DNA of 61,267 bases, the filler included, from Platydemus manokwari (Eukaryota), in the NCBI GenBank assembly GCA_037951405.1. It is 6 parts of 6 records of this genome, joined end to end, with 100 filler letters (N's around TTAATTAATTAA, not from the genome) between each part and the next. Parts side by side here need not be neighbours in the genome. Positions count along the whole stretch, not along the records: positions 1 to 9,364 come from JBBMOY011259430.1; 5 more parts are not named here. One strand, written 5' to 3'. Positions 1-39,310 of the stretch are shown here, in pieces. The translations under genes and the position numbers were made by a program. Under the pieces are notes generated by a model. It saw nothing but the letters and a program-made list of their open reading frames with translations. It was not told where the DNA came from and ran no database searches. Numbering within the stretch: position 1 is the first letter of the stretch; each line of letters starts with the position of its first letter.

Positions 1-214
1 ATGTAGAATGACTAAACAACAGAGCACAAAGAAAGCTTTAAAATGATATATTATATGAATAATTTTCATAAGATCTTTAATTTAATATTTAAAAATGAAA
101 AGCCAATTTAAAAAAGGCCATTATTTTTGCACCAACCTAATATTCCATCCGCTGTGGGCGGTGGTTGGCAAAATTCATGTGGATATATATGTGTTTTTCC
201 TTTAACTGGTTAGT

Positions 215-2090
215 ATAATGACTGTGGTTGCGTTAACTGTGGTGGCATTCTAGGGTCATATCATCCTGCTTTTAGCAATTCTATATCCTTTTGATGTTTT
301 ACTGATATTAGATACTTTGCTATTGGTGGACAAATGAAGCACATTACTTGCCAAGAATAACCGACTACATCCTTCAAGGTTTTCATCAAAATTGTTGATG
401 AAAAGATCATTTTTATCAAAGCTATAATGTAATTTATTCCCATAGAGAATGAAAAAAAAAAGCTTCCATACAGACTATAAAACATTTCTTTAAAGTGATC
501 CGCCGATAACAAAGCTTCATAATTGAATGATCCATCTATACTTCCTTGCAATACTTTTTCACCATTTTCATTATAACTTTCTCTCGTTGTTTTGGAAATA
601 ACATGTGTTTTCTTGCTTTTTCTATATCTTCCGCTACATATATCCCATTATTGTCCATATCATTTACTGGTTTAAATGCTAAATTTCCTGTTGGTCCATT
701 TGCTTTTAATGTTTTTACATCAGTACGCGGTTTCTTATAATCCGTTCCTATCCATCTCCCATCGTCAGATCGAAATACAGGATCCATTGCATTTGAACAA
801 GAATCTATTGGTGGTGCTTTATAATTGTGTCCTAATATGATTCTCGTAACTGGTTGTAAGAATGTCTTTTGATTATTGTAAATTATCAGCATTTCGTTGG
901 TACAATGCTTATGTTTTCTTACTACAAGATTCGTCACTTTTTTACATTTAGACGTATAGATGACTTCTACTACTCGAGCGAAGGTTCCTTTTTTCTCAAA
1001 TATTATTGGTGCGACAAGTTCTGGGTTTTTTATAGCTAAAGCTAACTTGGTCTTGAAGACTTCCCTATTTAGCTTACAATCATTCAAGATTAACTCCATA
1101 TAAACTTTCCAATTAATCCTTTGGCTAGGTGATAGAAATAGTCTAACTTATTGTTAAAGTACTGTGCCAGTTTCGCATCTAACTTATTTAGTTCTCCCTT
1201 AGTATCTTTTATCTCATTCTCACTTAGATATATTCCTTTATAATTTGTGACTATGACCATTTGAGCACATCTCTTATCATGTCTTTTATGTATGAATCTC
1301 ATTGCACTTTTCCCTTCTTCACTCATGTACAGTGTTGATATTTCTTTCATTCTGATTTCAGATGTTTCTCTTGCTATCAGATAAATAACTTTCCGCAAAT
1401 TTTGTCTCCTTAAATATTTTACCATTTACTGCATGTAATCATTCCTTTTTTAGTCATGTTAATGGACTTATACATGATTAGTGATATTCCATATTCACAA
1501 TTTGTCCATGTTGTCATCTTTTTAGTTTGTGCATCAAATGTTGCTTGGAATTCTCTTAACTCTATGATGTAATGTTTTAGTGCAACTACATTTTCTAATG
1601 TCTTATTCCACACTTGACATTCAGATTCCTTACAATATCCTCCTGTTCTTCTCCAATCTGCAGGTCCTATTTTTTGTCTTGTAATGGCTTTTCCTAATGT
1701 TATTGCATATCCTTATGATGTGTAATATGCCTCTAACTCAAATGTTTGTCTGCATTTTTCCTCTGTTGGTATTTCTGGCATTGTTGCATATACTGGTTTT
1801 AATATTGTTGTGTATGCTCTTGATGATCATGAGCAATGAAATGTCAGCTCTTGATACATTATTTTACACTCTCTGGCTTTTCAAACAGAAATTCGGACTC
1901 ATGATACACATACATTTCCTTAGCTATAGATTTTGTTAAATTTACAGGATATGCCTCTGGCATTTATCTGTATCTAATGAGTGTTTTTGCCCCCATTGTG
2001 GTTTTCCGCAATCATAACCACCTATCCCTGCATCTACTCCTATTAATCCTACTAGATACATTGTTAATAATGTTTGAACTATGGTGTAAA
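215..2090 (-). pseudogene. env: Envelope glycoprotein, chuvirus-G-like (class III fusion protein), frameshifted
   Basis: Signal-peptide-like VQTLLTMYLVGLIGVDA then GYDCGKPQWGQKHSLDTDKC (YDC at 2008-2016). Further motifs: GGYCKESECQVWNKTLENVV; CKLNREV..LALAIKNP..GTFARVVEVIYTSKC..CTNEM..YNNQKTFLQPVTRII..C..PVF..DGRW; GIY..EDIEKARKHMLFP. C-terminal hydrophobic segment. Confidence 0.75.
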
Positions 2091-2157
2091 TTTAGATTTT
2101 TGTTTAGATTGCTGACTTTCTGATTGCTTTTCTTCCTCTTGAACTATAAATTTTCTT

Positions 2158-3566
2158 CTATCTGCTAATTGTTCTAACATTGTTTACTAATTTAGTCCAT
2201 CCAACATTTTGATTTATTTCATTCTCATATTCATTTGCTATTAATTGCGCTCCCTCATCTTTGATCATTATTTGATTGTCTATTAAATTTAAAATTATTT
2301 GTAATGTTGTTATCCTTTTTCCAGGTGTTTTTTCTTTATTCATTATTTTCATAACTTTCTTAACTGTTTCCTTATCTGATATTTTATTGCTTATTCGATT
2401 TATTTCGTCTTTGTATTTATCTGTGCAATGCTCTAATGCTTTTATATGCAATTTCTCATTTTGATCTAAAGCGCTGGCTTCGCCACTAAGTGCTTGTAAA
2501 TATTGTTTGATTTGTTCCTTAACTTCTTCTTTCTGATTAAATTCTCTTATTACCTGTGCATGCATCTCATTTTTATCTAATGCCCAGATTTCGTCACTAA
2601 GTGTTTTATATTTAATTCTCCATTTCGCTTTTTCTTCTATGTCAGAATCTTTAGGTGGTATGTCTTCTTCATTTAAATTTATGGGATCATCGTAATTTGT
2701 GATATTATTCTAGATTTTATTCTTAACGTCTGGTGGCCTTTCTCTAGTTTTTCTCATTGTTGTTTCTTGATCTCTTATTATCTTTCATTTCTTCTTCTGT
2801 TTCAGTCCCTTTTTCTATCTTATCTTCTTCCCTTTTTCATAATTCATTTTTTTCATTCCATTTCCCTAATTTATTTTCTTCTACATTATTTCCTTGAACT
2901 TTTTGTTTTATTATTTCTCCATTGTCATCGTAATTATATGTTATTAATTGATTTATTGGCTCATTTATGGCTTGAAATGCTCTTGATGTTGATGGTATAT
3001 ATTCTTCTCTTATCATATTTCCATAATTATCAAATGGGAATTGTGGTATATAACCATAATTATTTTGTTGTTGATATTCAGGTGGATAAACTGGTTGTTG
3101 CTGTATACGATCCTCTTCATATATTATCTCTTCTTCTATTTTATCTTCTTCCTCATTATTCATTTCTGGTGTTGTTAAGTTTATTTCCTCTCGATATGGG
3201 TAAATTATTTTCTTGATCTCAAAACTATCTCGTTCACTTTTATTGTGACTTTGCAAAACATGGATCATTGTATTGTCCTTGTAAACATTCCATACAATTT
3301 CCTGACTCATCTTGTTTTTTTCTTATCTGCTTATTCACCTTATATGTTTCTGGTGATTCTATCAATTTCATAAAATCTTTTCCTGATGACTCAGTATCTT
3401 CTGCATTCTTAGCGTCCTTCTTCTTTTTCTTCTTCTTTGATGCTTCTCTTTTCTCATCAATGCTTTTGTCATCTCCACTTGCTACTTCATTTATTATTTC
3501 ATCCAGGTCTACTGACCATTGCCTATTAACTTTTCTTTCTTTACTCTTCTTTCTACATTTTTCCAT
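2158..3566 (-). pseudogene. Charged, low-complexity and coiled-coil linker between the Ubl array and env
   Basis: ORFs 3240-3566, 2837-3310 and 2158-2565 are K/E/Q-rich and have no convincing PR/RT/RH/IN motifs. Homologous sequence precedes the second glycoprotein copy. Confidence 0.55.
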
Positions 3567-3599
3567 TTCTATTTTTTTCCCTTATTGTTGATTTTATCA

Positions 3600-5420
3600 C
3601 TTTCCTTTTCTTTTTCCTCACACTTTATCATGTTTATGTCATTATATCCCCAACATACATTGAAGCTTATATACTTCCAGGGTATCGTCTTAGGTACATT
3701 TGGTATTGGTGTTATTATGTTAACTTTCACCACATTTATCTCATCTTCTGAGAATACATTTTTTAGTTCTTCTTCCTCTATTAAGGTTCGTTGTTTATAC
3801 TTCATAATTATTTTATTTAATCCCCATTCTCTCCTATTTATGTATTGTTCTTCTATTTTCCTCTTTAAATGTTTTACTTCCTTCTTTTTCTTTATTAACT
3901 TATAATCCTCTAAATCTTCCTGATAAATATTCAACACTTCTATTTTCACTATGTATTCATCTTCTTCACTTATTAACCCTATCTCTATACTATTCAAACC
4001 TGTTGGCTTTAAACTATGATGCAAAAACTGATAATCATCATCCAATTTTCTTTAGATTTCTTCTTTCTTTCCTTTATGTTCATATTTTAATTCCATTCTA
4101 CTTGGTATGCTTTTCAATCTCACTATGTATTTTTCCTGTGGTATTCCTGTTTGTTTAGATGTCCAATTTTTAAACCACTTAATTAATGCATTTCCACTTA
4201 TTCTGAATTCTTCTATTTCTTTCTTTTCCCTTATATTCACTTTTAATTGATATACAGGTGCTGACAATAACCATATTGGTAATTTAATACTATCCTTATC
4301 ACTAGTAATTCTTTCATCCCATGTTCTCATAACTGTTATTATCCTATTTTCTTATTTGCACTTATTCGATAATATACCATAGATTGTTCGTTATTCATAA
4401 ATATTCCTTTTGTTATTTGTTCTAACGTTATTCCTAATAAAGGTTCTCCTTCTCTCTTTAACTTTCCTACATCCACCTTATATGTCATTTTTCTTATTCC
4501 TTCTCTTTTGAACGGTCAAATTCGATCTATTTCAAATTTTAGATAATCTACCGTTACTGTATCTTTTATTCTTATGATCTTTATTGCTTCATTGCCTGTA
4601 TTATCTATCATTTTAACTTCAATTTCTATTTTGTTCTCTTGTTTAATTTCTTCTGCACAAGTTTTCATATTTATTTCATATTGATCCCATGGTATTGATT
4701 TTGTTGTGTAGTCATGTTTTCCTGTATTGAATTTTATTTCTATTAAGTTTATCTCGTCGTCCTTGAATATGTCTTTTAATTTAACCTTATCCACCATTTG
4801 TTCTTGATTATGATATATGTTTATTTTTACATTCTCCCACTCTGTTTGGTCAAATTAAAGTTCTCGTATTGCTTCTCGTACTTCATTCATTGTTCGATGT
4901 TTAAACATTAACTCATTTTCCCTAATTATATTAGTGTAATAGTTAGGTTCTATTATCATCTTAACTATGTAATATGCATATGGTGCTCCTTTTTCTCCGT
5001 CTTCTTTTATTGATGTGATCACTATTTCATTCTTATAATATTCGTTTAATGGATAATACCAAAATTGAAGTTCTTCATCTAATATTTCCCATTTTCTTAA
5101 CTCTATTTCTCTTTCTAATGTGCAATTTCTTTCCCCCTGTCTATATCTTTCTTTCCTCCATCTTATTATATATTTATCCGGTGGCTTTTCTTGTTGTTTG
5201 CTAACCCATTCTCGAAACTATTGTATTGATGTGATCGCTATATCATTCTTATAATATTGATTTTAAACTTTATTTTCTTTTCACTATCGTGTATCTCTTT
5301 TCCAATTGTTATTTCTAATTCGTAAGCTGGATTTCCTTGCAATTTAACCGGTTCTCTTCTCCATTCACTAACATATTTTCCACTGCTTATTCTTCTTGTT
5401 GCAAAAGTCCATGGCCTCAT
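3600..5420 (-). pseudogene. Tandemly duplicated unit with about five ubiquitin/SUMO-like domains, directly downstream of the capsid
   Basis: The two units align: IQ*FREWVSKQQEKPPDKYIIR / IKWFKNWTSKQTGIPQEKYIVR; LDEELQFWYYPL / LDDDYQFLHHSL; LKDIFKDDEIN..KSIPW / LKNVFSEDEIN..KTIPW. Ubl-like patterns include VKHLKRKIEEQ...KIIMKYKQRTLIEEEELKNVF and TVDYLKFEI. Confidence 0.6.
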
Positions 5421-6400
5421 CATGGCTATAACATTATTCTCTTTATTTTTATCGTCTTTAATTTGAAACTGTGTTAACAGTTTGTTTAATTGTTCCCATG
5501 TTACATTCATGTCAGGGTTTTTTTCATGATCTTTAGTCGCTATGTTATTTTTACTAGTAGTCGGTATCTCTTTTTTATTTTTCTTAAATGTTACTGCACT
5601 TATTAATGGATAATTTCCAGGTATCCCATAATTTATATTATGATTTGTTAAACTATTTGACATGTAAATAATTTCAACTCTTCTAGCTTTTTGAACTAAT
5701 TTCTCAAAATTTTTATATTCTGCTAATGCTATTGGACTTATTAATATGAGTATTATTTCCCTTCTAAATTGATCTATAACCATTTGCTCGCGACCCTCTA
5801 CAGATACATATTTGCCATAAGCCTTAATTACTAATTCTTTTATTGCCATTGAATATTCTCCTACACTTTCACCAGACATTTGGTATCTATCATTAAATTG
5901 CTTTACATAAAATTCATGCACATCATCTCCCACAACTAATTTGCTTTTTAATTCCCTAACTAAATCCTTATAACATTTAATTTCTTTAAAATCTAATCCT
6001 TGTAATGCTTGTAACGCCTATGATTTTAAATACAATGACAATCTTTGAAATTGTTCTGCCTGCGTCAAGCTATATGCTTCAGTTAATCTATTATATTCAT
6101 TGAAGAAATCATCAAACCCTTCCTGTTTTCCATCATATGGGTTAATTGGTATATACACATTTTTGCTATTCATAATTACATCATTCATTTTGTCTAATAG
6201 TGCTTTATATTTTACAATTAATTCACTATCTATTTGGGTGCATATTTCAATTATTTATCCATCAATTTGGGTGCTTATTTCTCTACAATCGATTATTTCA
6301 CTATCAAATTGGGGGCTTATCTCTCTACAATTCACTATTTCACTATCTATATCAATTTGGGTGCTTAGATTTTCTAAATTATTTCCTAATATTATTGTTC
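5238..6400 (-). pseudogene. gag: Gag capsid (retrotransposon gag, Ty3/gypsy-like) with an in-frame stop at 6018-6020
   Basis: Manual translation: PINPYDGKQEGFDDFFNEYNRLTEAYSLTQAEQFQRLSLYLKS*ALQAL...FNDRYQMSGESVGEYSMAIKELV (MHR-like QxxxESVxEY). The N-terminal part has ISTQID-type repeats. No CCHC knuckle seen. Confidence 0.85.
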
Positions 6401-6775
6401 AATTTGAACTACTTTTTTCGGTAAATTACTACTGCTAAATTATGTTGATTCACACTGCTTATCAAACTTCAATTAATATCAAACTACCTAAGTCTATTAA
6501 CGCTTTTCTCAGATATTTAATCAACACTTTTCGTGGAGTAAACTTGAAACTTTTCCTGGAACAATCGATGATATTACGAAACAGACTTATTAAGTTATCT
6601 ATCTTCTTACTAATTAATGTCACTTAGAGCAGGGTGTAGACCTCTCAAATTGTTAAATTTGTTGCGATAAAGTTGAAAACCTTAATCTATTTTTCTTCTT
6701 TTTATATACCGAAGTTACAAATTATGCGTCGCTAAACTAGCTCTCCGGTTCACGCAATAAAAACGCGCTTTAATT

Positions 6776-6915
6776 ATCAAATTTATCAAATGCTCCTTGG
6801 CTCAAATTGACTTTATCTCTAGCTCCTTGGCTCAATTTAACTTTATCAACTTTATCTATAGCTCCTTGGTTTGATTCGAATTTATCAAATTTATCAAATG
6901 CTCCTTGGCTTAATT
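6776..6915 (-). repeat. Short tandem repeats in the retroelement leader (LSQGA-x-DK in ORF 6770-6982)
   Basis: GCTCCTTGG occurs four times with TTATCAAA/CTTTATC spacers. Confidence 0.75.
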
Positions 6916-7014
6916 CAATTTCGTTTATTTTATCTATTCTAATTCTAGTAATTTCTAACTTCACTAATTTACCTATTTGCAACTTTAACTTCTCAATTTT
7001 GAATTCACAATTTC

Positions 7015-7267
7015 AAACTTTTCACTAATCGAGCACCAATTATCTTATTCAAATTTAATGGTTAATTTTAAAACTTTAAACTTAATTTTTACTTCCAAAT
7101 TTATCCTCACCCGTATCACCAATTGTTGTTTAACTTTTAACGATTTTTTACACAAATTTCTCCTCACTCGAACACCAGTTGTTGTTACTTAATTTCTAAT
7201 TTTACACCTTCAACTTTTAATAATTTTTAAACTAAAATTTCTCCTCACTCGGTTACCAATTGATGTT
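7015..7267 (-). repeat. Array of four PBS-like motifs with AT-rich spacers
   Basis: Minus strand: TGGTAACCGAGTGAGGAG (from 7258), TGGTGTTCGAGTGAGGAG (7177), TGGTGATACGGGTGAGGAT (7121), TGGTGCTCGATTAGTGAA (7038). The first three are preceded by AACA(A/T)CA and followed by AAATTT. Confidence 0.7.
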
Positions 7268-8553
7268 TATTATTTATACTTGCAAACTTCTAATGATTTT
7301 TCAAACAAATTGTTATGTTTGGGGCTTGCTAATTTTATTTCTTATCTTATCAGTCTCGTAATTCAATTTATCCTTATTATTGTTGATGATCACTGTTGTC
7401 TTAATCAGTCACACGTGGTTCTGATTAAGCCCTAGGTACGAACTATTGAAACTATTTATTTCTTTCTTCGCCTCGCGTTTATATGATGATAATATCAAAC
7501 GGCAAAAATGATCAATTATTACTACCAAAATTATTCCTATGTCAAGACTATGAATTTTAACAAAACTATCAGTCTCTATTTTAATTCTATCAGTCTCAAA
7601 AACTTTGATATCAATATTATCAATTCTTACTCAAATCAATAACAAACTCGTTGACTACAAAATGTTTATTGACATCAAATTTACACTAAACAATTATATA
7701 AATTACTACGTTTACAATGGTTAAATATACAATTCAAAAATACGAACAACCTTATCAAGCTTCTGGGGAAGATTTACGATTAATAGACTGCATTCTATTG
7801 CAGCAAAACCACCTTTCAAGATATTTGAGACAAAGCTCTATAGTAAAATAATATACACGGCGTATATAGTATTGATCAGTGGTTTACAGAATTAATCTGA
7901 CTTACGTTAACGAGCATATACTTGAACAATGGCTGTGGCAAATATGGATAGGATCGAATACGAGCTTCTACTGGCGACTTCACGTAACAGGAGGTTTTGT
8001 GTAGTTTGTAACGGATTATTCTATGTTACAGGCAGTTCGAATGTTATGACGTTTCCCCCCCTATTTATATGAATCGGGAGACGAATTTCGTCGTCATGGA
8101 TTATTGGTGAAAATGGGTTCAATTAAATTTATTCCCATGAGATTTCCCTTTTATTTTATTAAAATAAACTTGCTCGTTAACTTTGAGATAATGAAATATA
8201 AATAATTTAATATTCTTCTACGTTTAATTCTTAACATTTTCTTGGAAAGGTGCTATAATATTTATCAACCGTAAATAAATTATCATTATCATTTTATGAT
8301 AATAATAATTATTATTATTCTTATTTTTTACCAATTCAATAATCAACCAGAAGCTTGATTTACAAAATAAAATTTAATTAATTATAAAAAAGGTAAAAAT
8401 AAAATACATTGCTTGATTAACCAAGCCATTTATAAAAATTGGTACAATAATAACCGCTTGAATAATCAAGCCTGAAAATTGCTACACTTATTTATAAAAA
8501 TCGATATCAAATGTTGTCAAGCGAAACTATTTGAATGGCAAAAATTTGTTACA
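7261..8553 (-). repeat. Putative 5' LTR (~1.3 kb)
   Basis: Minus strand starts TGTAAC (8553) and ends AACATCA (7261), followed after 2 nt by TGG of a PBS-like site. Internal TATA box. No second LTR is present to confirm the boundaries. Confidence 0.55.
8055..8070 (-). promoter_or_regulatory. TATA box of the putative LTR
   Basis: Minus strand reads ATATAAATAGGGGGGG and points toward gag. Confidence 0.5.
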
Positions 8554-9364
8554 GTTTTTCATATTTGGATTGATTATAGTTTTCATTTTGCCATTTTCCC
8601 AACAATTCAACTTCTACGATAAGGTTGAAATTTTTTTCAAAATCTTGATTCATATGTTTTTACATTAAAAAATGAAACATTTTCATAGAAATCTTTTACT
8701 TACTGTTTGTTGTCTGTATGCTTTGCTTTTGAAATCAAACAAAACCGTTTATTTTTCTGCTCTTCTGTGTTTTTGTAAATGATTTGGAAACATTTGCTTA
8801 TTTTTCAGCTTGATGTATTTTCCTTTGTCGATAAACAAATCTTAAATAAAACTTTCATTATTTTTTAAAGTTATCTTATTTGTTTAGTTCTGTAATTTTT
8901 ACATAATTCTAAAGGATAGCACAAAATAACACATTATCAAATTACCTCTAGTTAGATATGATGGTTGTTTTAAAAAATAAACTAAAAGAAAAGATTTTAA
9001 AATATTTATCAAAGCTTGTCGATAACTTGAATAATTTTTATTTTCCATTTGAAGCCACGGAGGACATATATAGAATAAATAATCAAAATATAAAATTTGA
9101 TCTCGATATAATTGTAATTATTCAGTTGATATAGGAGTGAAAAATGCGTATTTTGTAGGTTGATTTTGACAGTATTAAGAGCTATGACTTAATATTTTGG
9201 GATCATCAGCATAAGCAATAATATGGATTTTCGTATTGGAAACCTAATAGGTTGATGCCTACTAATTACACTTAAACGAGAATTATATATTAGGTGTATT
9301 AGTATGATTCCGGCTTTTTTTTAAAAACAAAAACATTTTTTAAAATATTTATTTAATGAAATTC

Positions 9365-35429: not shown

Positions 35430-36300
35430 TTCTTTATAATGGAAATAGAAGTCCGGGAAATTGAGTGAGAATGGGAATAAAGTAAATTAAAGAAAAAGAT
35501 CGCATCCAGTAAATATATGCATTCCAACAAACTAATATTGAAACCAAAGATAAGCATGTCTACTCGAAAATCTAGTGGACGGCCATTAGGATCAGCAAAT
35601 GCAGTGAAAAGGATGATAGAAAAAGCCAATCCGTACGGATATATGATCAGAGAACGCTTATAATAACATCCGCGGCACAAATAAAGCAAAAAATCAGGAT
35701 ACAAATAAACCAACCGTGATCAAACGACCAAAATGTCTCAATGGCATTAAGAAAAAACAAGATGATAATATAAAAAATTCGACAATATTTAAAGGCAATA
35801 AATTATTTATTGTGTACACATAAGTGCAATGAGTGGCACAAGGTGAATAGATTATGAGAACTGATAAATTCAATCAAAAATACATTAAAGGAAATACAAT
35901 ATTGTGGCAATAAAGAAAAATTGAAAACTGTGGTACAATCAGTAAATTAATAAGAAACGACAGTTGGAAGAGTTGCGATTACGTTAAGTACGATGCCTAA
36001 AAATGTAGATAAGGTAATAATAAGTATTTATGAGAAGCAGAAATAATGTATGACAAATATAACAGGTGATAAATGAATTAGGGAATTGACTCCTAGAGTT
36101 ACTGCATATGAGTAAGAATGCCAGTACAATCAGAACAAGGACCCATGACATGATTAGCAAACATTATTCACCATATACGTAATACGTGCTATAGAAGGAG
36201 TAGAGACAGGAATTAGTGAATATGATTGCAACATACCACGGCGGTGAAAGAAATATTCGTTATTGGGCATAGATGGATGCTCAGAACACTATCCGGTATA
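35430..36300 (+). pseudogene. Second retroelement copy: linker and glycoprotein N-terminus
   Basis: QTLFTIYVIRAIEGVETGISEYDCNIPRR*KKYSLLGIDGCSEHYPV matches copy 1 QTLLTMYLVGLIGVDAGIGGYDCGKPQWGQKHSLDTDKC/PEAYPV. Upstream YGYMIRE, KIRQYLKA and NKEKLKTVV..TVGRVAITL match the copy 1 linker. Confidence 0.7.
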
Positions 36301-36949
36301 TGGACAATTCTGTTATTTATTTATGCTTATTTTGATGTTCTTTATTTCGCAATTTGTATTGACGGTATTTGACAATTGAGAAGACATTTGCTGTCAGTGT
36401 TAGAAGTCAAAAAAATGGTTATACGCAATAATGAAATAAATAATAATATAATGTCACAAAATATATTAACAATAATCATACCAAAATAAATTATTAACCT
36501 AAAATTATAATAATCTAGAATTGAAAATTAATATGACCATTTGTATAAGATATAGAATAATAAAACCAATAATTCCAATCAGCAAATGTTAAATTCCAAA
36601 TAAAATCATATCAAATCGCATGTCAATATGTCAAAAACCTTCTATTGGAGTCGTGTGGGAGTTGACAAAAGTGTTTTAAATCTTGAGCCACATTAGGAGT
36701 GACCATCAGAATAAAAACAAGAGAGTAAATCTTAAGAAGAAAGAAATCTCAAGAATTAATAAAGGACTTTATTCGAATTACTTACGACAAGGTAAAATTT
36801 TCAACTGTGAGCAGAAAAAATCAAGTAGTGTATTTTTAAATTGCTGTCATGTGATTTTTGTAATAAATTTTTAAATTTCTTGTCATTGCATTATTATTTA
36901 AATAATAATTTGATAACTTTAATGCCGTATAATTGAAGAATCTTTCCAA

Positions 36950-38560
36950 TGAAGACCTTTGTTTCTATCATTCAAGACCAAGGGCATGTCCGCCCTCAAC
37001 ATCAAAGGATAAAGTGGGCCCTTTTTGATCATAACGAACCTACTATCGATGAAACCCGTCTCACATCAGCCAGATATAATGCCAAATATAATAATGCCGA
37101 ACATTTTCGGGGCTCTCGCAACCAACACAAATATATTATCGACCTTGAAATTTGAGCACCGCACATTCTCTGTCAAACTAATCACCGTTATTTCAAAACC
37201 TGCTGAAGATAAATTGTTCAATAGATGACTCCACTGAAGCAATCGGACCTAATGTCAAAATATCAAATCCAGATACTCAATATCTGTGTAATTCAGCCAT
37301 AAAGCTCAAAATTTGTCCAAATCTAACCAACTTCTGACTACTTAGCAACTATCTGGATATCCTATCTTTTTCCTTCAAAGGCTGTCAACAATATGCGAAG
37401 ACAATTGATCACTTCTTATCTCCCAATCAAGCAGATGTCAAGCAGTCCAAATATATCAAAAAATAACTAAAAACAGGCAAACACCGCACACTAAACGAGC
37501 TCCTCTCACTCCTGAGCTGGTGATGGAATCAACGCATGAACAAGGACATCAATGTTTTCCAGCCTCCTCATCCTTTCCCCCAGAAGTCCAAGAACACTTT
37601 CAACAATTCCATTATCTAAATACACCTTCTAAATTTACTTTTCAATGCTACTGTTGATTCATTAGAGCAGTGGTCCCCTCGAAGCTACATTTGTATCAGC
37701 ATAATATTGAAATCCTGCAAATCAATCAGACTCTTCTTCAATCTTCAAACCACATGTACTAGAAGTCTATTTTTTCACGGAAATGTCCAATTTCAAACCA
37801 GGTAAACATTCAAATTTTCACATTGTCTCATCATGAAGGCCAAAGCTCTCAAGGATACATCATAAGGAATCTTTGTAACTATCCTTAAACTTTGGTTTCT
37901 TAACTGAAACTAGGAAGGCAATCTTCTCTCTCCAAATCAAAAAGCAATGCTTACCTTTGACCGATGCGCCGAACACAATAACTATTTATTAACTCTATTA
38001 GAATATATCACTGAATATCACAAAAATATACACCTCTGCTGGATTGACTTGAAAGAAGAATTTAAATTTTACCATATCATGTCATATGGTACGCATTTGT
38101 CAAAATTGAATGTAACTCTCACTAAATATAAATGGTCAAAGTTCTGTACCAGGATCCAAAATCAACCTACTCTTACGGCCAACTTAAGACACCACTAATT
38201 CCTATCTTTTGCGATGTCAAGCAAAAGATGTCGTTAATCGACTTTCTCATCAGATCATCTCTAATACTTCCAGAGCCATTGACCAACAATTGACACGAAT
38301 TCTCAACTCCAGCCTAAGCCGATGGCATAGTCATCTTAGGAAATTCCGGCCAAAACCTCGAACTTAGACTGAATCATTTCATTAAAGATGCGAGAGACAT
38401 TCATCGATGTGCTTAAGTGTGTGTACAATACAAAAGTTAGAATTTTTGATCAAGCAGTGTTGACTGTTGACAACACCAACTTCAACAAAAACTTGGAAGT
38501 AACATTCAGTCTTCCAAAGCGAGCACTACAATCCATCATAACGAATTTTGAAGTAGTGGA
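36950..38560 (+). mobile_element. Degenerate non-LTR retrotransposon (R2/NeSL-like RT fragment)
   Basis: FDRCAEHNNYLL...KNIHLCWIDLKEEF resembles GCxEH...WxDLxxAF of RLE-clade RTs, and a VKQ remnant lies near 38215. C/A-rich composition. Boundaries approximate. Confidence 0.6.
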
Positions 38561-38579
38561 CACATAGTGAGTAAGGTAA

Positions 38580-39310
38580 TGGAACACGTGGTACTGAAGA
38601 GCAATTAATAATGTACAAGACTAATTCTTACAAATGCCCATTAATGTTACTGAAAAAAGCAAAATTTAGAGAAATTAAAGTGACATTGTTCAAGGAAATT
38701 AATTTTTTAAAGAATTAAATATAGGCACGCCAACAGACACAGTAGAAATAAAAATGAAAGAAACACCAGTACTATATATGGCTAATAAAACCAGTATTGT
38801 AATGGGATTTTGCCTTAAGGAGTTGATAAGAAGTGTGCACAACAATGGATAGTCACAAATTACAAGGGGATGTCTCTAGGTGAATATGAAATGAAAATGT
38901 AAAAACAGAGCTGAGCAAGTAGGGGTTAAGTTATCCCAGTATTTCGACAACAAAATTGATTATTTTTATCACCTTAATTAGATATATTTGAAGAAAATGT
39001 ACATGGGAATGCTGTTTAACAAATCTAAGACAAGGCGCGAAGTTTTACAAGCAAATATTGTTTTATCAGTAACAAATTAGGAACTGATAGTTCCATTGAT
39101 ATTTGATGATAAAGAAACGTTCGAAAGAGTAGTAGGAGATATTACTTTCATATTTCAATGCAGAATGGTGAACAATTTACTAACTAGGAAATATGACTAC
39201 TATGTAAATGAAATGAATATAATATACAACAATAGACAGCTATTCTTATAACCAGAAACAAGAATTGTATTGAGAGAAAATTGCAAAGCAGTAAAAAGAG
39301 GCTTATATTC
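38580..39310 (+). pseudogene. env: Second retroelement copy: central part of the chuvirus-like glycoprotein
   Basis: DKKCAQQWIVTNYKG..LSQYFDNKIDYFYHL..ELIVPLIFDDKETFERVVG..NEMNIIYNNRQLFL*PETRIVL aligns with ORFs 1090-1425 and 536-1099. Confidence 0.85.

What the first reader, a model, noticed from the sequence alone, without database searches (positions are those of the whole stretch)
215..8553. Virus-like LTR element built as capsid - poly-Ubl - class III fusogen with no visible pol
Seen in sequence: LTR/PBS, gypsy-type capsid, duplicated Ubl-like units, linker, signal peptide plus YDC glycoprotein, all co-oriented. No PR, RT (YxDD), RNase H or integrase motif lies between gag and env, and there is no CCHC knuckle. 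The diverged second copy (35430-39310) has the same linker directly before env, so the linker-env junction looks like a family trait. Established: chuvirus-type glycoproteins have been captured by BEL/Pao elements in insects, and gB-like envs occur in some invertebrate retroelements, normally after pol. Inference: this is either a non-autonomous structural-only element supplying enveloped particles, or a family with unusual gag-env-pol order and pol beyond position 1. Either would be an unusual infectious-particle architecture in a probable flatworm.
Basis: partly seen in the sequence, partly recalled or inferred. Interest (0 to 1): 0.9.

Follow-up and report, generated by a model that had tools for sequence, protein, structure and literature searches.

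The report
Decayed Burro-like gag-env retroelement fragment
This is the broken front half (capsid, a duplicated accessory module, envelope glycoprotein) of a giant gypsy-type retrovirus-like element whose relatives place the envelope gene between gag and pol, a layout already published for planarian Burro elements, so it is a real but largely known kind of thing.

Summary
The features lie on the minus strand and are mostly real. The envelope is a Monjiviricetes/chuvirus-type fusion glycoprotein (Pfam PF24664, E 8e-29). The capsid is gypsy/Arc-type. Between them sit a tandem duplication of a ~370-aa module and a low-complexity linker. No PR, RT, RNase H, integrase or CCHC knuckle is present in the piece. 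"Ubl-like" has only weak support, and LTR/PBS could not be tested.

The copy is dead, with roughly 9-10 frame changes and about as many in-frame stops. The piece ends about 200 nt after env, so the absence of pol says little.

The ten closest env relatives scanned are long proteins from metagenome contigs. They encode gag - env - two proteases - RT - RNase H - integrase, often as one ORF. One relative is flanked by 98%-identical LTRs 20 kb apart.

This gag-env-pol order, with a Ubl-like and a Bcl-2-like domain before an in-frame mononegavirus-type env, was described for planarian Burro/GYPSM1 elements in 2019. It was described again for Platyhelminthes, Nematoda and Bryozoa "errantiviruses" (bioRxiv 2023, eLife 2026).

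Verdict: a decayed member of a known kind. What may still be new is the duplicated, knuckle-less gag extension.

The parts
7450..8553 (-).
   Evidence: Strand skew typical of the coding part stops near 7500. The piece holds no second copy. No tRNA gene was found in the window or the fetched loci to test a PBS. No Rfam family matches.
6190..7450 (-). Leader between the putative LTR and gag, with three tandem-repeat arrays
   Evidence: Arrays with units of 33/42, 39 and 81 nt. A relative (L003) also has tandem arrays just upstream of gag.
5460..6188 (-). gag, Ty3/gypsy (Arc-like) capsid domain; broken (1 in-frame stop, no frame change); no CCHC knuckle
   Evidence: tblastn with the L004 gag gives E 3e-14, and with P0007 E 2e-10; phmmer. 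The family profile hits dArc2 at E 1.5e-6, plus dArc1, PNMA2 and PEG10. Relatives' gag hits PF03732 and zf-CCHC. No CCHC pattern in any frame. The pieces alone give no Pfam hit.
4360..5460 (-). Accessory module, copy 1 (three sub-units, the first a candidate Ubl); broken
   Evidence: Colinear similarity to copy 2. No homologue found in two word-indexed protein searches, the metagenome scan or the fetched loci.
3580..4350 (-). Accessory module, copy 2 (same three sub-units); broken
   Evidence: BLASTP to copy 1 gives E 1e-8 (30% over 84 aa) and E 2e-4 (35% over 46 aa). The AlphaFold models have low confidence (pLDDT 47.7 and 33.7). Weak Ubl signals appear.
2710..3580 (-). Low-complexity linker (Lys/Glu/Asp/Gln-rich); reading frame changes several times
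   Evidence: Translations; short tandem repeats; no Pfam family at a meaningful level.
2160..2710 (-). Open 183-codon segment, helix-rich by composition, directly before env; function unknown
   Evidence: Translation. Only weak hits to helical Pfam families. No Bcl-2 support, although relatives have a Bcl-2-like segment at this position.
200..2090 (-). env: Monjiviricetes/chuvirus-type (class III by family assignment) fusion glycoprotein with N-terminal signal-like stretch and C-terminal hydrophobic stretch; broken (4-5 frame changes, 2-3 in-frame stops, plus 3 stops in the junction just upstream)
   Evidence: PF24664 at E 8.4e-29 and 1.4e-6. phmmer finds 323 relatives, the best at 44% identity. 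Colinear chains to ten relatives. Signal-like stretch and Y-D-C.
1..200 (.). AT-rich tail after env, up to the piece's edge; no coding signal
   Evidence: 24% GC and opposite AT skew in 1-150. No similarity to the post-env or protease regions of relatives, even at E 10.

Best explanation
The window holds the 5' part of a dead copy of a Burro-like giant Ty3/gypsy LTR retroelement, an endogenous retrovirus-like 'errantivirus' with the order gag - accessory domains - env - pol. It comprises leader, gag capsid, a tandemly duplicated accessory module, a low-complexity linker and a captured mononegavirus/chuvirus-type fusion glycoprotein. In intact relatives pol (two aspartic proteases, RT, RNase H, integrase) follows env directly, often in the same reading frame. 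Here the piece ends about 200 nt after env, so pol is either beyond the edge or lost from this copy.

Shown: domain identities, their order and co-orientation, the decay of this copy, and the env-pol linkage in relatives.

Inferred, for intact members: transcription starts from the 5' LTR and one giant polyprotein is translated. The glycoprotein enters the ER membrane through its internal signal stretch and is anchored by its C-terminal hydrophobic stretch, which returns the downstream protease and polymerase to the cytosol. Signal peptidase and the element's proteases then release the parts. The capsid assembles and acquires an envelope carrying the fusogen. The accessory domains (Ubl-like here; Ubl-like and Bcl-2-like in relatives) would interact with host ubiquitin and apoptosis pathways.

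This particular copy cannot make any of these proteins.
For: Env identity: PF24664 at E 8.4e-29. The eight best of 323 env relatives are proteins of 748-2855 aa. Pfam shows env-PR-PR-RT-RH-IN in P0003, P0008 and P0152. P0154 has the same order with extra C2H2, Ank and a third protease copy. P0011 runs env-PR-RT-RH and then stops. P0001, P0004, P0005, P0006 and P0015 have env-PR(-PR).

Gag or a CCHC knuckle lies in the same ORF upstream of env in P0004, P0007 and P0015, or in the preceding ORF in L001, L004 and L007. L004 has direct repeats of at least 650 nt at 98% identity, 20,152 nt apart, flanking gag-env-pol.

The window's capsid matches these relatives' gag (E 3e-14), and the family profile hits Arc/PNMA/PEG10 capsids. 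Window env is colinear with relatives over its full length.

In L005 a sub-threshold ubiquitin hit (PF00240, E 0.0034) and a Bcl-xL-like segment (PDB E 0.01; Pfam Bcl-2 E 9.6e-4) precede env. That is the order reported for Burro (PMC6431247). GAG-ENV-POL elements in Platyhelminthes are reported in PMC13524379. The window's 29% GC agrees with the >70% A/T stated for Schmidtea (PMC11410931). The in-frame stops checked for codon type include all three types, so this is decay, not recoding.
Against: Pol is not seen in the window, and the last 150-200 nt look non-coding, so this copy may be truncated after env. No close relative of this lineage was found: the best env identity is 44%, and nothing matches the duplicated module. 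The window lacks the CCHC knuckles that Burro and the relatives have. It shows no Bcl-2-like signal before env. LTR and PBS are unverified. I could not align the window to an actual Burro sequence, and the host is not identified.
Confidence: 0.8

Rival explanations
1. A non-autonomous, structural-only LTR element (gag - accessory module - env, no pol) that depends on an autonomous partner.
For: No pol domain appears anywhere in the 9.4-kb piece. The coding-like strand skew stops shortly after env and the last 150 nt are AT-rich. The relative P0007 is a gag-env ORF of 1352 aa that ends 300 nt before its contig end.
Against: Only about 200 nt follow env before the piece's edge, so absence of pol is uninformative. 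In nine of the ten closest env relatives scanned, protease follows env in the same protein, and in P0002's locus the next ORFs carry PR and RT-RH-IN. The stretch between env and protease is poorly conserved in relatives, so finding no similarity there is expected either way.
Confidence: 0.08
2. A chance juxtaposition: a non-retroviral chuvirus-derived insertion (an EVE of a glycoprotein gene) lying next to an unrelated gypsy gag fragment.
For: The env family is that of Monjiviricetes RNA viruses. Stand-alone glycoproteins of about 620-700 aa make up many of the more distant hits. No relative bridges the 3.3 kb between capsid and env.
Against: Capsid and env are co-oriented and sit in the order seen in relatives whose single ORFs contain both (P0007, P0015, P0004). 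The closest env relatives are all retroelement-borne; the virus-sized stand-alone proteins are more distant (E 3e-15 or weaker against 3e-38). No other mononegavirus gene (N, L) is hit in any open piece. Strand skew is continuous from 500 to 7500.
Confidence: 0.05
3. Host genes domesticated from gag and env (as with Arc/PNMA or syncytin-like genes) rather than a transposable element copy.
For: The capsid profile's best solved-structure hits are domesticated capsids such as Arc, PNMA2 and PEG10.
Against: Every coding part is interrupted by stops and frame changes. There is no long intact ORF. In-frame stops of all three types occur.
Confidence: 0.02

Closest known systems
Burro / GYPSM1 giant gypsy-like LTR retroelements of planarians (Grohme et al. 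2018; Arkhipova & Yushenova 2019, PMC6431247)
   Same: Gypsy-type gag at the N-terminus. A mononegavirus-type env lies in frame between gag and pol. A ubiquitin-like motif sits between gag and env. AT-rich host genome. Decayed copies with stops and frameshifts are reported in Dugesia japonica. The window's distant relatives also share Ank repeats, duplicated proteases, ORFs of about 4,800 aa and a Bcl-2-like segment before env.
   Different: The window shows no CCHC knuckle; Burro has two or three. It has no detectable Bcl-2-like, MATH, Smc or AIR1 motif. It has a tandem duplication of a ~370-aa module that the paper does not mention.
GAG-ENV-POL 'errantiviruses' with HSV gB / chuvirus-type ENV in Nematoda, Bryozoa and Platyhelminthes (PMC13524379; Sacco et al. 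2022 for nematodes, cited there)
   Same: Ty3/gypsy backbone, a class III-type captured glycoprotein, and env placed between gag and pol.
   Different: Those elements were catalogued as intact, multi-copy elements with separate ORFs of ordinary size. The window copy is decayed, has about 1,100 codons between capsid and env, and its pol is not visible.
Mosquito BEL/Pao elements carrying a Chuviridae-derived glycoprotein (Dezordi et al. 2020, PMC7642597)
   Same: Same glycoprotein family, captured by an LTR retroelement.
Exogenous Jingchuvirales/Mononegavirales glycoproteins (Pfam PF24664)
   Same: Homologous ectodomain over the full profile in relatives (profile positions 5-650).
   Different: Here the gene is embedded in a retroelement polyprotein. 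Stand-alone proteins of virus-like size are only distant hits (34% identity or less).

Membership tests
Ty3/gypsy (Metaviridae) LTR retroelement | Paired long terminal repeats | not testable with these tools
   At most one end of the element is in the piece, and no long direct repeat is present. A relative (L004) has 98%-identical repeats of at least 650 nt, 20,152 nt apart.
Ty3/gypsy (Metaviridae) LTR retroelement | Primer-binding site complementary to a tRNA 3' end next to the 5' LTR | not testable with these tools
   No tRNA gene in the window or the seven loci to compare with. The LTR boundary is unknown.
Ty3/gypsy (Metaviridae) LTR retroelement | Retrotrans_gag / Arc-like capsid domain | tested here: met
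   E 3e-14 to the L004 gag. The profile hits dArc2 at E 1.5e-6. L001 gag passes the Pfam PF03732 cut-off (24.7 against 24.1 bits). The window's pieces alone do not reach Pfam.
Ty3/gypsy (Metaviridae) LTR retroelement | CCHC zinc knuckle(s) in gag | tested here: not met
   No CCHC-spaced pattern in any of the six frames. In a decayed copy, mutation of a knuckle cannot be excluded. Relatives have them.
Ty3/gypsy (Metaviridae) LTR retroelement | pol with the order PR-RT-RNase H-IN | not testable with these tools
   No pol domain in the piece, and the piece ends about 200 nt after env. The order is present in relatives P0003, P0008, P0152 and P0154.
Burro-like / GAG-ENV-POL elements | env located downstream of gag and upstream of pol, co-oriented | tested here: inconclusive
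   The gag-then-env order on one strand is met. The position relative to pol cannot be seen in the window. It is met in all relatives that contain pol.
Burro-like / GAG-ENV-POL elements | env of the mononegavirus/chuvirus (gB-like, class III) type | tested here: met
   PF24664 at E 8.4e-29. The class III fold itself was not tested: no solved structure is detectable by sequence. The assignment follows the family and PMC13524379.
Burro-like / GAG-ENV-POL elements | Ubiquitin-like (Ubi2/SUMO-like) domain between gag and env | tested here: inconclusive
   No Pfam ubiquitin hit at E 1 or better. phmmer to the ubiquilin-2 UBL gives E 0.65. The AlphaFold model has pLDDT 47.7 with strand-strand-helix-strand-strand order. 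Foldseek finds nothing significant, but about 14 of the listed weak hits are Ubl domains. BLASTP to the Ubl-like region of L005 gives E 0.065, in register. The second model has pLDDT 33.7 and is unusable. A profile search of PDB finds no Ubl.
Burro-like / GAG-ENV-POL elements | Bcl-2-like domain directly before env | tested here: not met
   hhalign probability 0.6%. No Bcl-2 hit in PDB or Pfam for the 183-aa pre-env segment. It is present weakly in relative P0002.
Non-retroviral chuvirus EVE | Other mononegavirus genes (N, L) nearby, or absence of retroelement genes in cis | tested here: not met
   No such Pfam hits. A co-oriented gypsy capsid lies upstream.

The most novel reading that the evidence does not exclude
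In this lineage the nucleocapsid zinc knuckles of gag have been lost, and a tandem array of ubiquitin-like-containing modules (two copies of about 370 aa, unmatched in any database searched) sits between capsid and the in-frame fusogen. If so, this is a distinct sub-type of Burro-like element whose particle assembly or release relies on built-in Ubl domains rather than a classical NC. Alternatively, the family is truly pol-less.
Probability: 0.15. Interest if true: 0.5.

Novelty: new member of a known kind. Interest (0 to 1): 0.25.

Why it matters
The finding matters little as an architecture, because env in frame between gag and pol in flatworm giant gypsy elements has been in the literature since 2019 and was generalised in 2023-2026. 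Its modest value is threefold. It is another, divergent lineage of these env-bearing elements (env at most 44% identical to anything in 1.8 billion representative proteins). Ubl-like accessory domains appear to recur between gag and env in distant members. And the metagenome relatives found here (single ORFs up to 4,844 aa with env, three protease copies, ankyrin repeats, pol, and a downstream RNase T-like ORF) document that the Burro-type organisation is wider than the few planarians described.

Tried and rejected
- Pfam on every minus-strand open piece found only env; capsid and module pieces gave nothing meaningful.
- Word-indexed protein searches with the capsid piece and the 160-aa module piece gave no hit.
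- A JGI metagenome scan with the env piece found no relative.
- HMMs built from the window's own paralogous sub-units, searched against all ORFs of the seven loci, gave nothing below E 0.3.
- Both AlphaFold jobs gave low-confidence models, so the Foldseek result is only a hint.
- A PDB profile search with the module alignment found no Ubl.
- The Bcl-2-like test of the pre-env segment was negative.
- The search for post-env or protease similarity in the last 330 nt was negative.
- tRNA and Rfam scans were empty, so the PBS is untested.
- A stop-codon reassignment reading was rejected because in-frame stops of all three types occur.
- The long plus-strand ORFs are antisense, low-complexity artefacts of the A-rich coding strand.


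Full report
**1. What is in the window**

The piece (1-9364) is 29% G+C. From about 500 to 7500 the plus strand has strongly negative AT and GC skew, and nearly all sizeable open frames lie on the minus strand.

No long direct or inverted repeat exists inside the piece. No tRNA gene and no Rfam family are present.

**2. The envelope gene**

Four minus-strand open pieces between about 2090 and 200 belong to Pfam PF24664 (Monjiviricetes_fusion, "viral fusion glycoprotein"). The best piece scores E 8.4e-29 (100 bits against a 27-bit cut-off) and another E 1.4e-6.

Colinear tblastn chains to ten relatives cover the whole glycoprotein, for example residues 137-751 of P0003 and 875-1490 of P0004, with outer bounds about 2073 to 249. 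A hydrophobic signal-like stretch followed by Y-D-C is seen at the start, and a hydrophobic stretch near the end.

The gene is broken. The chains need 4-5 frame changes and contain 2-3 in-frame stops. Three more stops lie in the junction just upstream.

**3. The capsid**

The stretch about 6188-5460 gives no Pfam hit piece by piece, because one in-frame stop splits the domain. It does match the gag of relatives:
- tblastn gives E 3e-14 for the L004 gag and E 2e-10 for P0007 (phmmer).
- Those gag proteins carry Retrotrans_gag (PF03732). L001 passes the curated cut-off; L004, L007 and P0015 fall just below it. L001, L004, L007 and P0004 carry CCHC knuckles.
- A profile of the window piece plus five relatives finds Drosophila Arc2 (E 1.5e-6), Arc1 (E 3.9e-4), PNMA2, MOAP1 and PEG10 capsid structures.

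"Gypsy-type capsid" is therefore correct. No CCHC-spaced pattern occurs in any of the six frames.

**4. Between capsid and env**

A module of about 370 aa occurs twice in tandem, at about 5460-4360 and 4350-3580. Three colinear sub-units recur about 1,100 nt apart. With compositional adjustment the pairwise E-values are 1e-8 (30% identity over 84 aa), 2e-4 (35% over 46 aa), and not significant for the third. At 28-35% protein identity the duplication is old, so it is a trait of the lineage and not an accident of this copy.

The support for "Ubl-like" is only suggestive, and only for the first sub-unit:
- phmmer to the ubiquilin-2 UBL gives E 0.65.
- The low-confidence AlphaFold model (pLDDT 47.7) has strand-strand-helix-strand-strand order.
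- The Foldseek hits are all non-significant, but about 14 of those listed are ubiquitin-like domains.
- BLASTP gives E 0.065, in register, to the part of a relative's ORF that has a sub-threshold PF00240 hit.
- The second model (pLDDT 33.7) is unusable, and a profile search of PDB found no Ubl.

No homologue of the module was found anywhere. "Poly-Ubl" is therefore an over-statement of what can be shown.

Downstream of the modules come a low-complexity Lys/Glu/Asp/Gln-rich linker (about 3580-2710) and an uninterrupted 183-codon segment (about 2710-2160) with no detectable family. In particular it shows no Bcl-2 signal.

**5. State of the copy**

- gag: 1 in-frame stop and no frame change.
- Duplicated modules: 2 frame changes and 3 in-frame stops.
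- Linker and its borders: 3 frame changes. This count is uncertain because the region is low-complexity.
- Env and its upstream junction: 4-5 frame changes and 5-6 stops.

In all there are roughly 9-10 frame changes and about as many stops over 6 kb. Of the five single in-frame stops checked for codon type, three are TAA, one TAG and one TGA. This is decay and not an unusual genetic code.

**6. Where is pol?**

However, env ends at about 200-250 and the piece ends at 1. The last 150 nt are 24% G+C with the opposite AT skew. They show no similarity to what follows env in relatives, although that stretch is poorly conserved even among relatives. The window cannot say whether pol follows or was lost.

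**7. Relatives**

A full HMMER scan of 1.84 billion representative proteins with the best env piece gave 323 hits. The eight best (E 3e-38 to 4e-30, 37-44% identity) are 748-2855 aa long. Proteins of the size usual for stand-alone viral glycoproteins (about 620-700 aa) appear only from E 3e-15 onwards.

Pfam gives the following architectures:
- P0003, P0008 and P0152: env - PR - PR - RT - RNase H - IN.
- P0154 (4,844 aa): the same order, with C2H2, ankyrin and a third protease copy.
- P0011: env - PR - RT - RNase H, then the protein ends.
- P0001, P0004, P0005, P0006 and P0015: env followed by one or more proteases.
- P0004 (CCHC), P0007 and P0015 (Retrotrans_gag): gag upstream of env in the same ORF.

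The genomic contexts show a gag ORF of 416-949 aa, then env-pol, then often an RNase_T-like ORF. L004 has direct repeats of at least 650 nt, 98% identical and 20,152 nt apart, around the whole unit. It is thus an LTR element of more than 20 kb.

In L005 a ubiquitin-family hit (E 0.0034, below the cut-off) and a Bcl-xL-like segment (PDB E 0.01; Pfam E 9.6e-4) precede env. All seven contigs come from one ENA assembly (ERZ25039515), and their host is unknown to me.

**8. Comparison with the literature**

Arkhipova & Yushenova 2019 (PMC6431247, section 7) annotate planarian Burro/GYPSM1 elements. These exceed 30 kb and have a 4,873-aa ORF1. The annotated order is Gag (retrotrans_gag plus 2-3 CCHC), other motifs, a Ubi2/SUMO-like motif, BCL2, and then an env region with hits to mononegavirus fusion glycoproteins lying "in-frame ... 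between gag and pol". PR, dUTPase, RT, RH and IN follow. They also note decaying copies with stops and frameshifts in Dugesia japonica.

The eLife paper PMC13524379 (bioRxiv 2023) reports GAG-ENV-POL Ty3/gypsy elements with gB/chuvirus-type ENV in Nematoda, Bryozoa and Platyhelminthes. It cites Sacco et al. 2022 for nematodes.

The window's composition agrees with the >70% A/T of Schmidtea (PMC11410931), but that is only a consistency.

**9. Verdict**

This is a real feature: a decayed 5' portion of a Burro-like gag-env-pol retroelement. It is a new, divergent member of a known kind at most. It may simply be an already catalogued family, which I could not test.

The residual points of interest are the missing zinc knuckles and the old tandem duplication of an unmatched module with a candidate Ubl.

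- Confidence in the main explanation: 0.8.
- Interest: 0.25.

Noticed in passing
P0008 (relative; NCBI HBK71150.1): A 2,627-aa env-PR-RT-RNase H-IN polyprotein is deposited as a hypothetical protein of a Flavobacteriaceae MAG on a 9-kb contig. This is evidently a eukaryotic retroelement mis-binned into a bacterial genome bin.
   Followed up: no
L001 21702-22841, L004 16542-17882, L006 9547-11622: Relatives carry an RNase_T-family (3'-5' exonuclease) ORF just after pol. L001 also has a RING (zf-C3HC4_3) ORF, and L004 has P4Ha_N fragments inside its LTR pair. These are accessory or captured genes of the giant elements.
   Followed up: no
L001 (P0154), L005 13210-14964, L007 12777-14609: Ankyrin repeats sit between duplicated or triplicated aspartic protease domains, and P0154 has a C2H2 finger. 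P0154 is a single 4,844-aa ORF, similar in size and content to the ORF1 reported for Burro.
   Followed up: partly
L002 1-4416 (-) and 4399-8652 (+): Two gag-env copies lie head to head on opposite strands of one 9-kb contig.
   Followed up: no
window 6190-7450: Three tandem-repeat arrays (units of 33/42, 39 and 81 nt) lie in the leader upstream of gag. A relative (L003 209-1222) has comparable arrays upstream of its gag.
   Followed up: partly
window 5005-5047 and 5221-5263: A 43-nt direct repeat at 88% identity, 216 nt apart, lies inside module copy 1. It is much more similar than the old module duplication, so it is probably a later local duplication.
   Followed up: no
window 1-150: An AT-rich (24% G+C) tail whose AT skew is opposite to that of the coding part. 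It could be the end of this truncated copy, a different insertion, or a degenerate env-protease spacer.
   Followed up: partly
L001-L007: All seven contigs come from one ENA assembly (ERZ25039515) yet range from 29% to 44% G+C. This suggests several families, or several hosts, in that sample.
   Followed up: no
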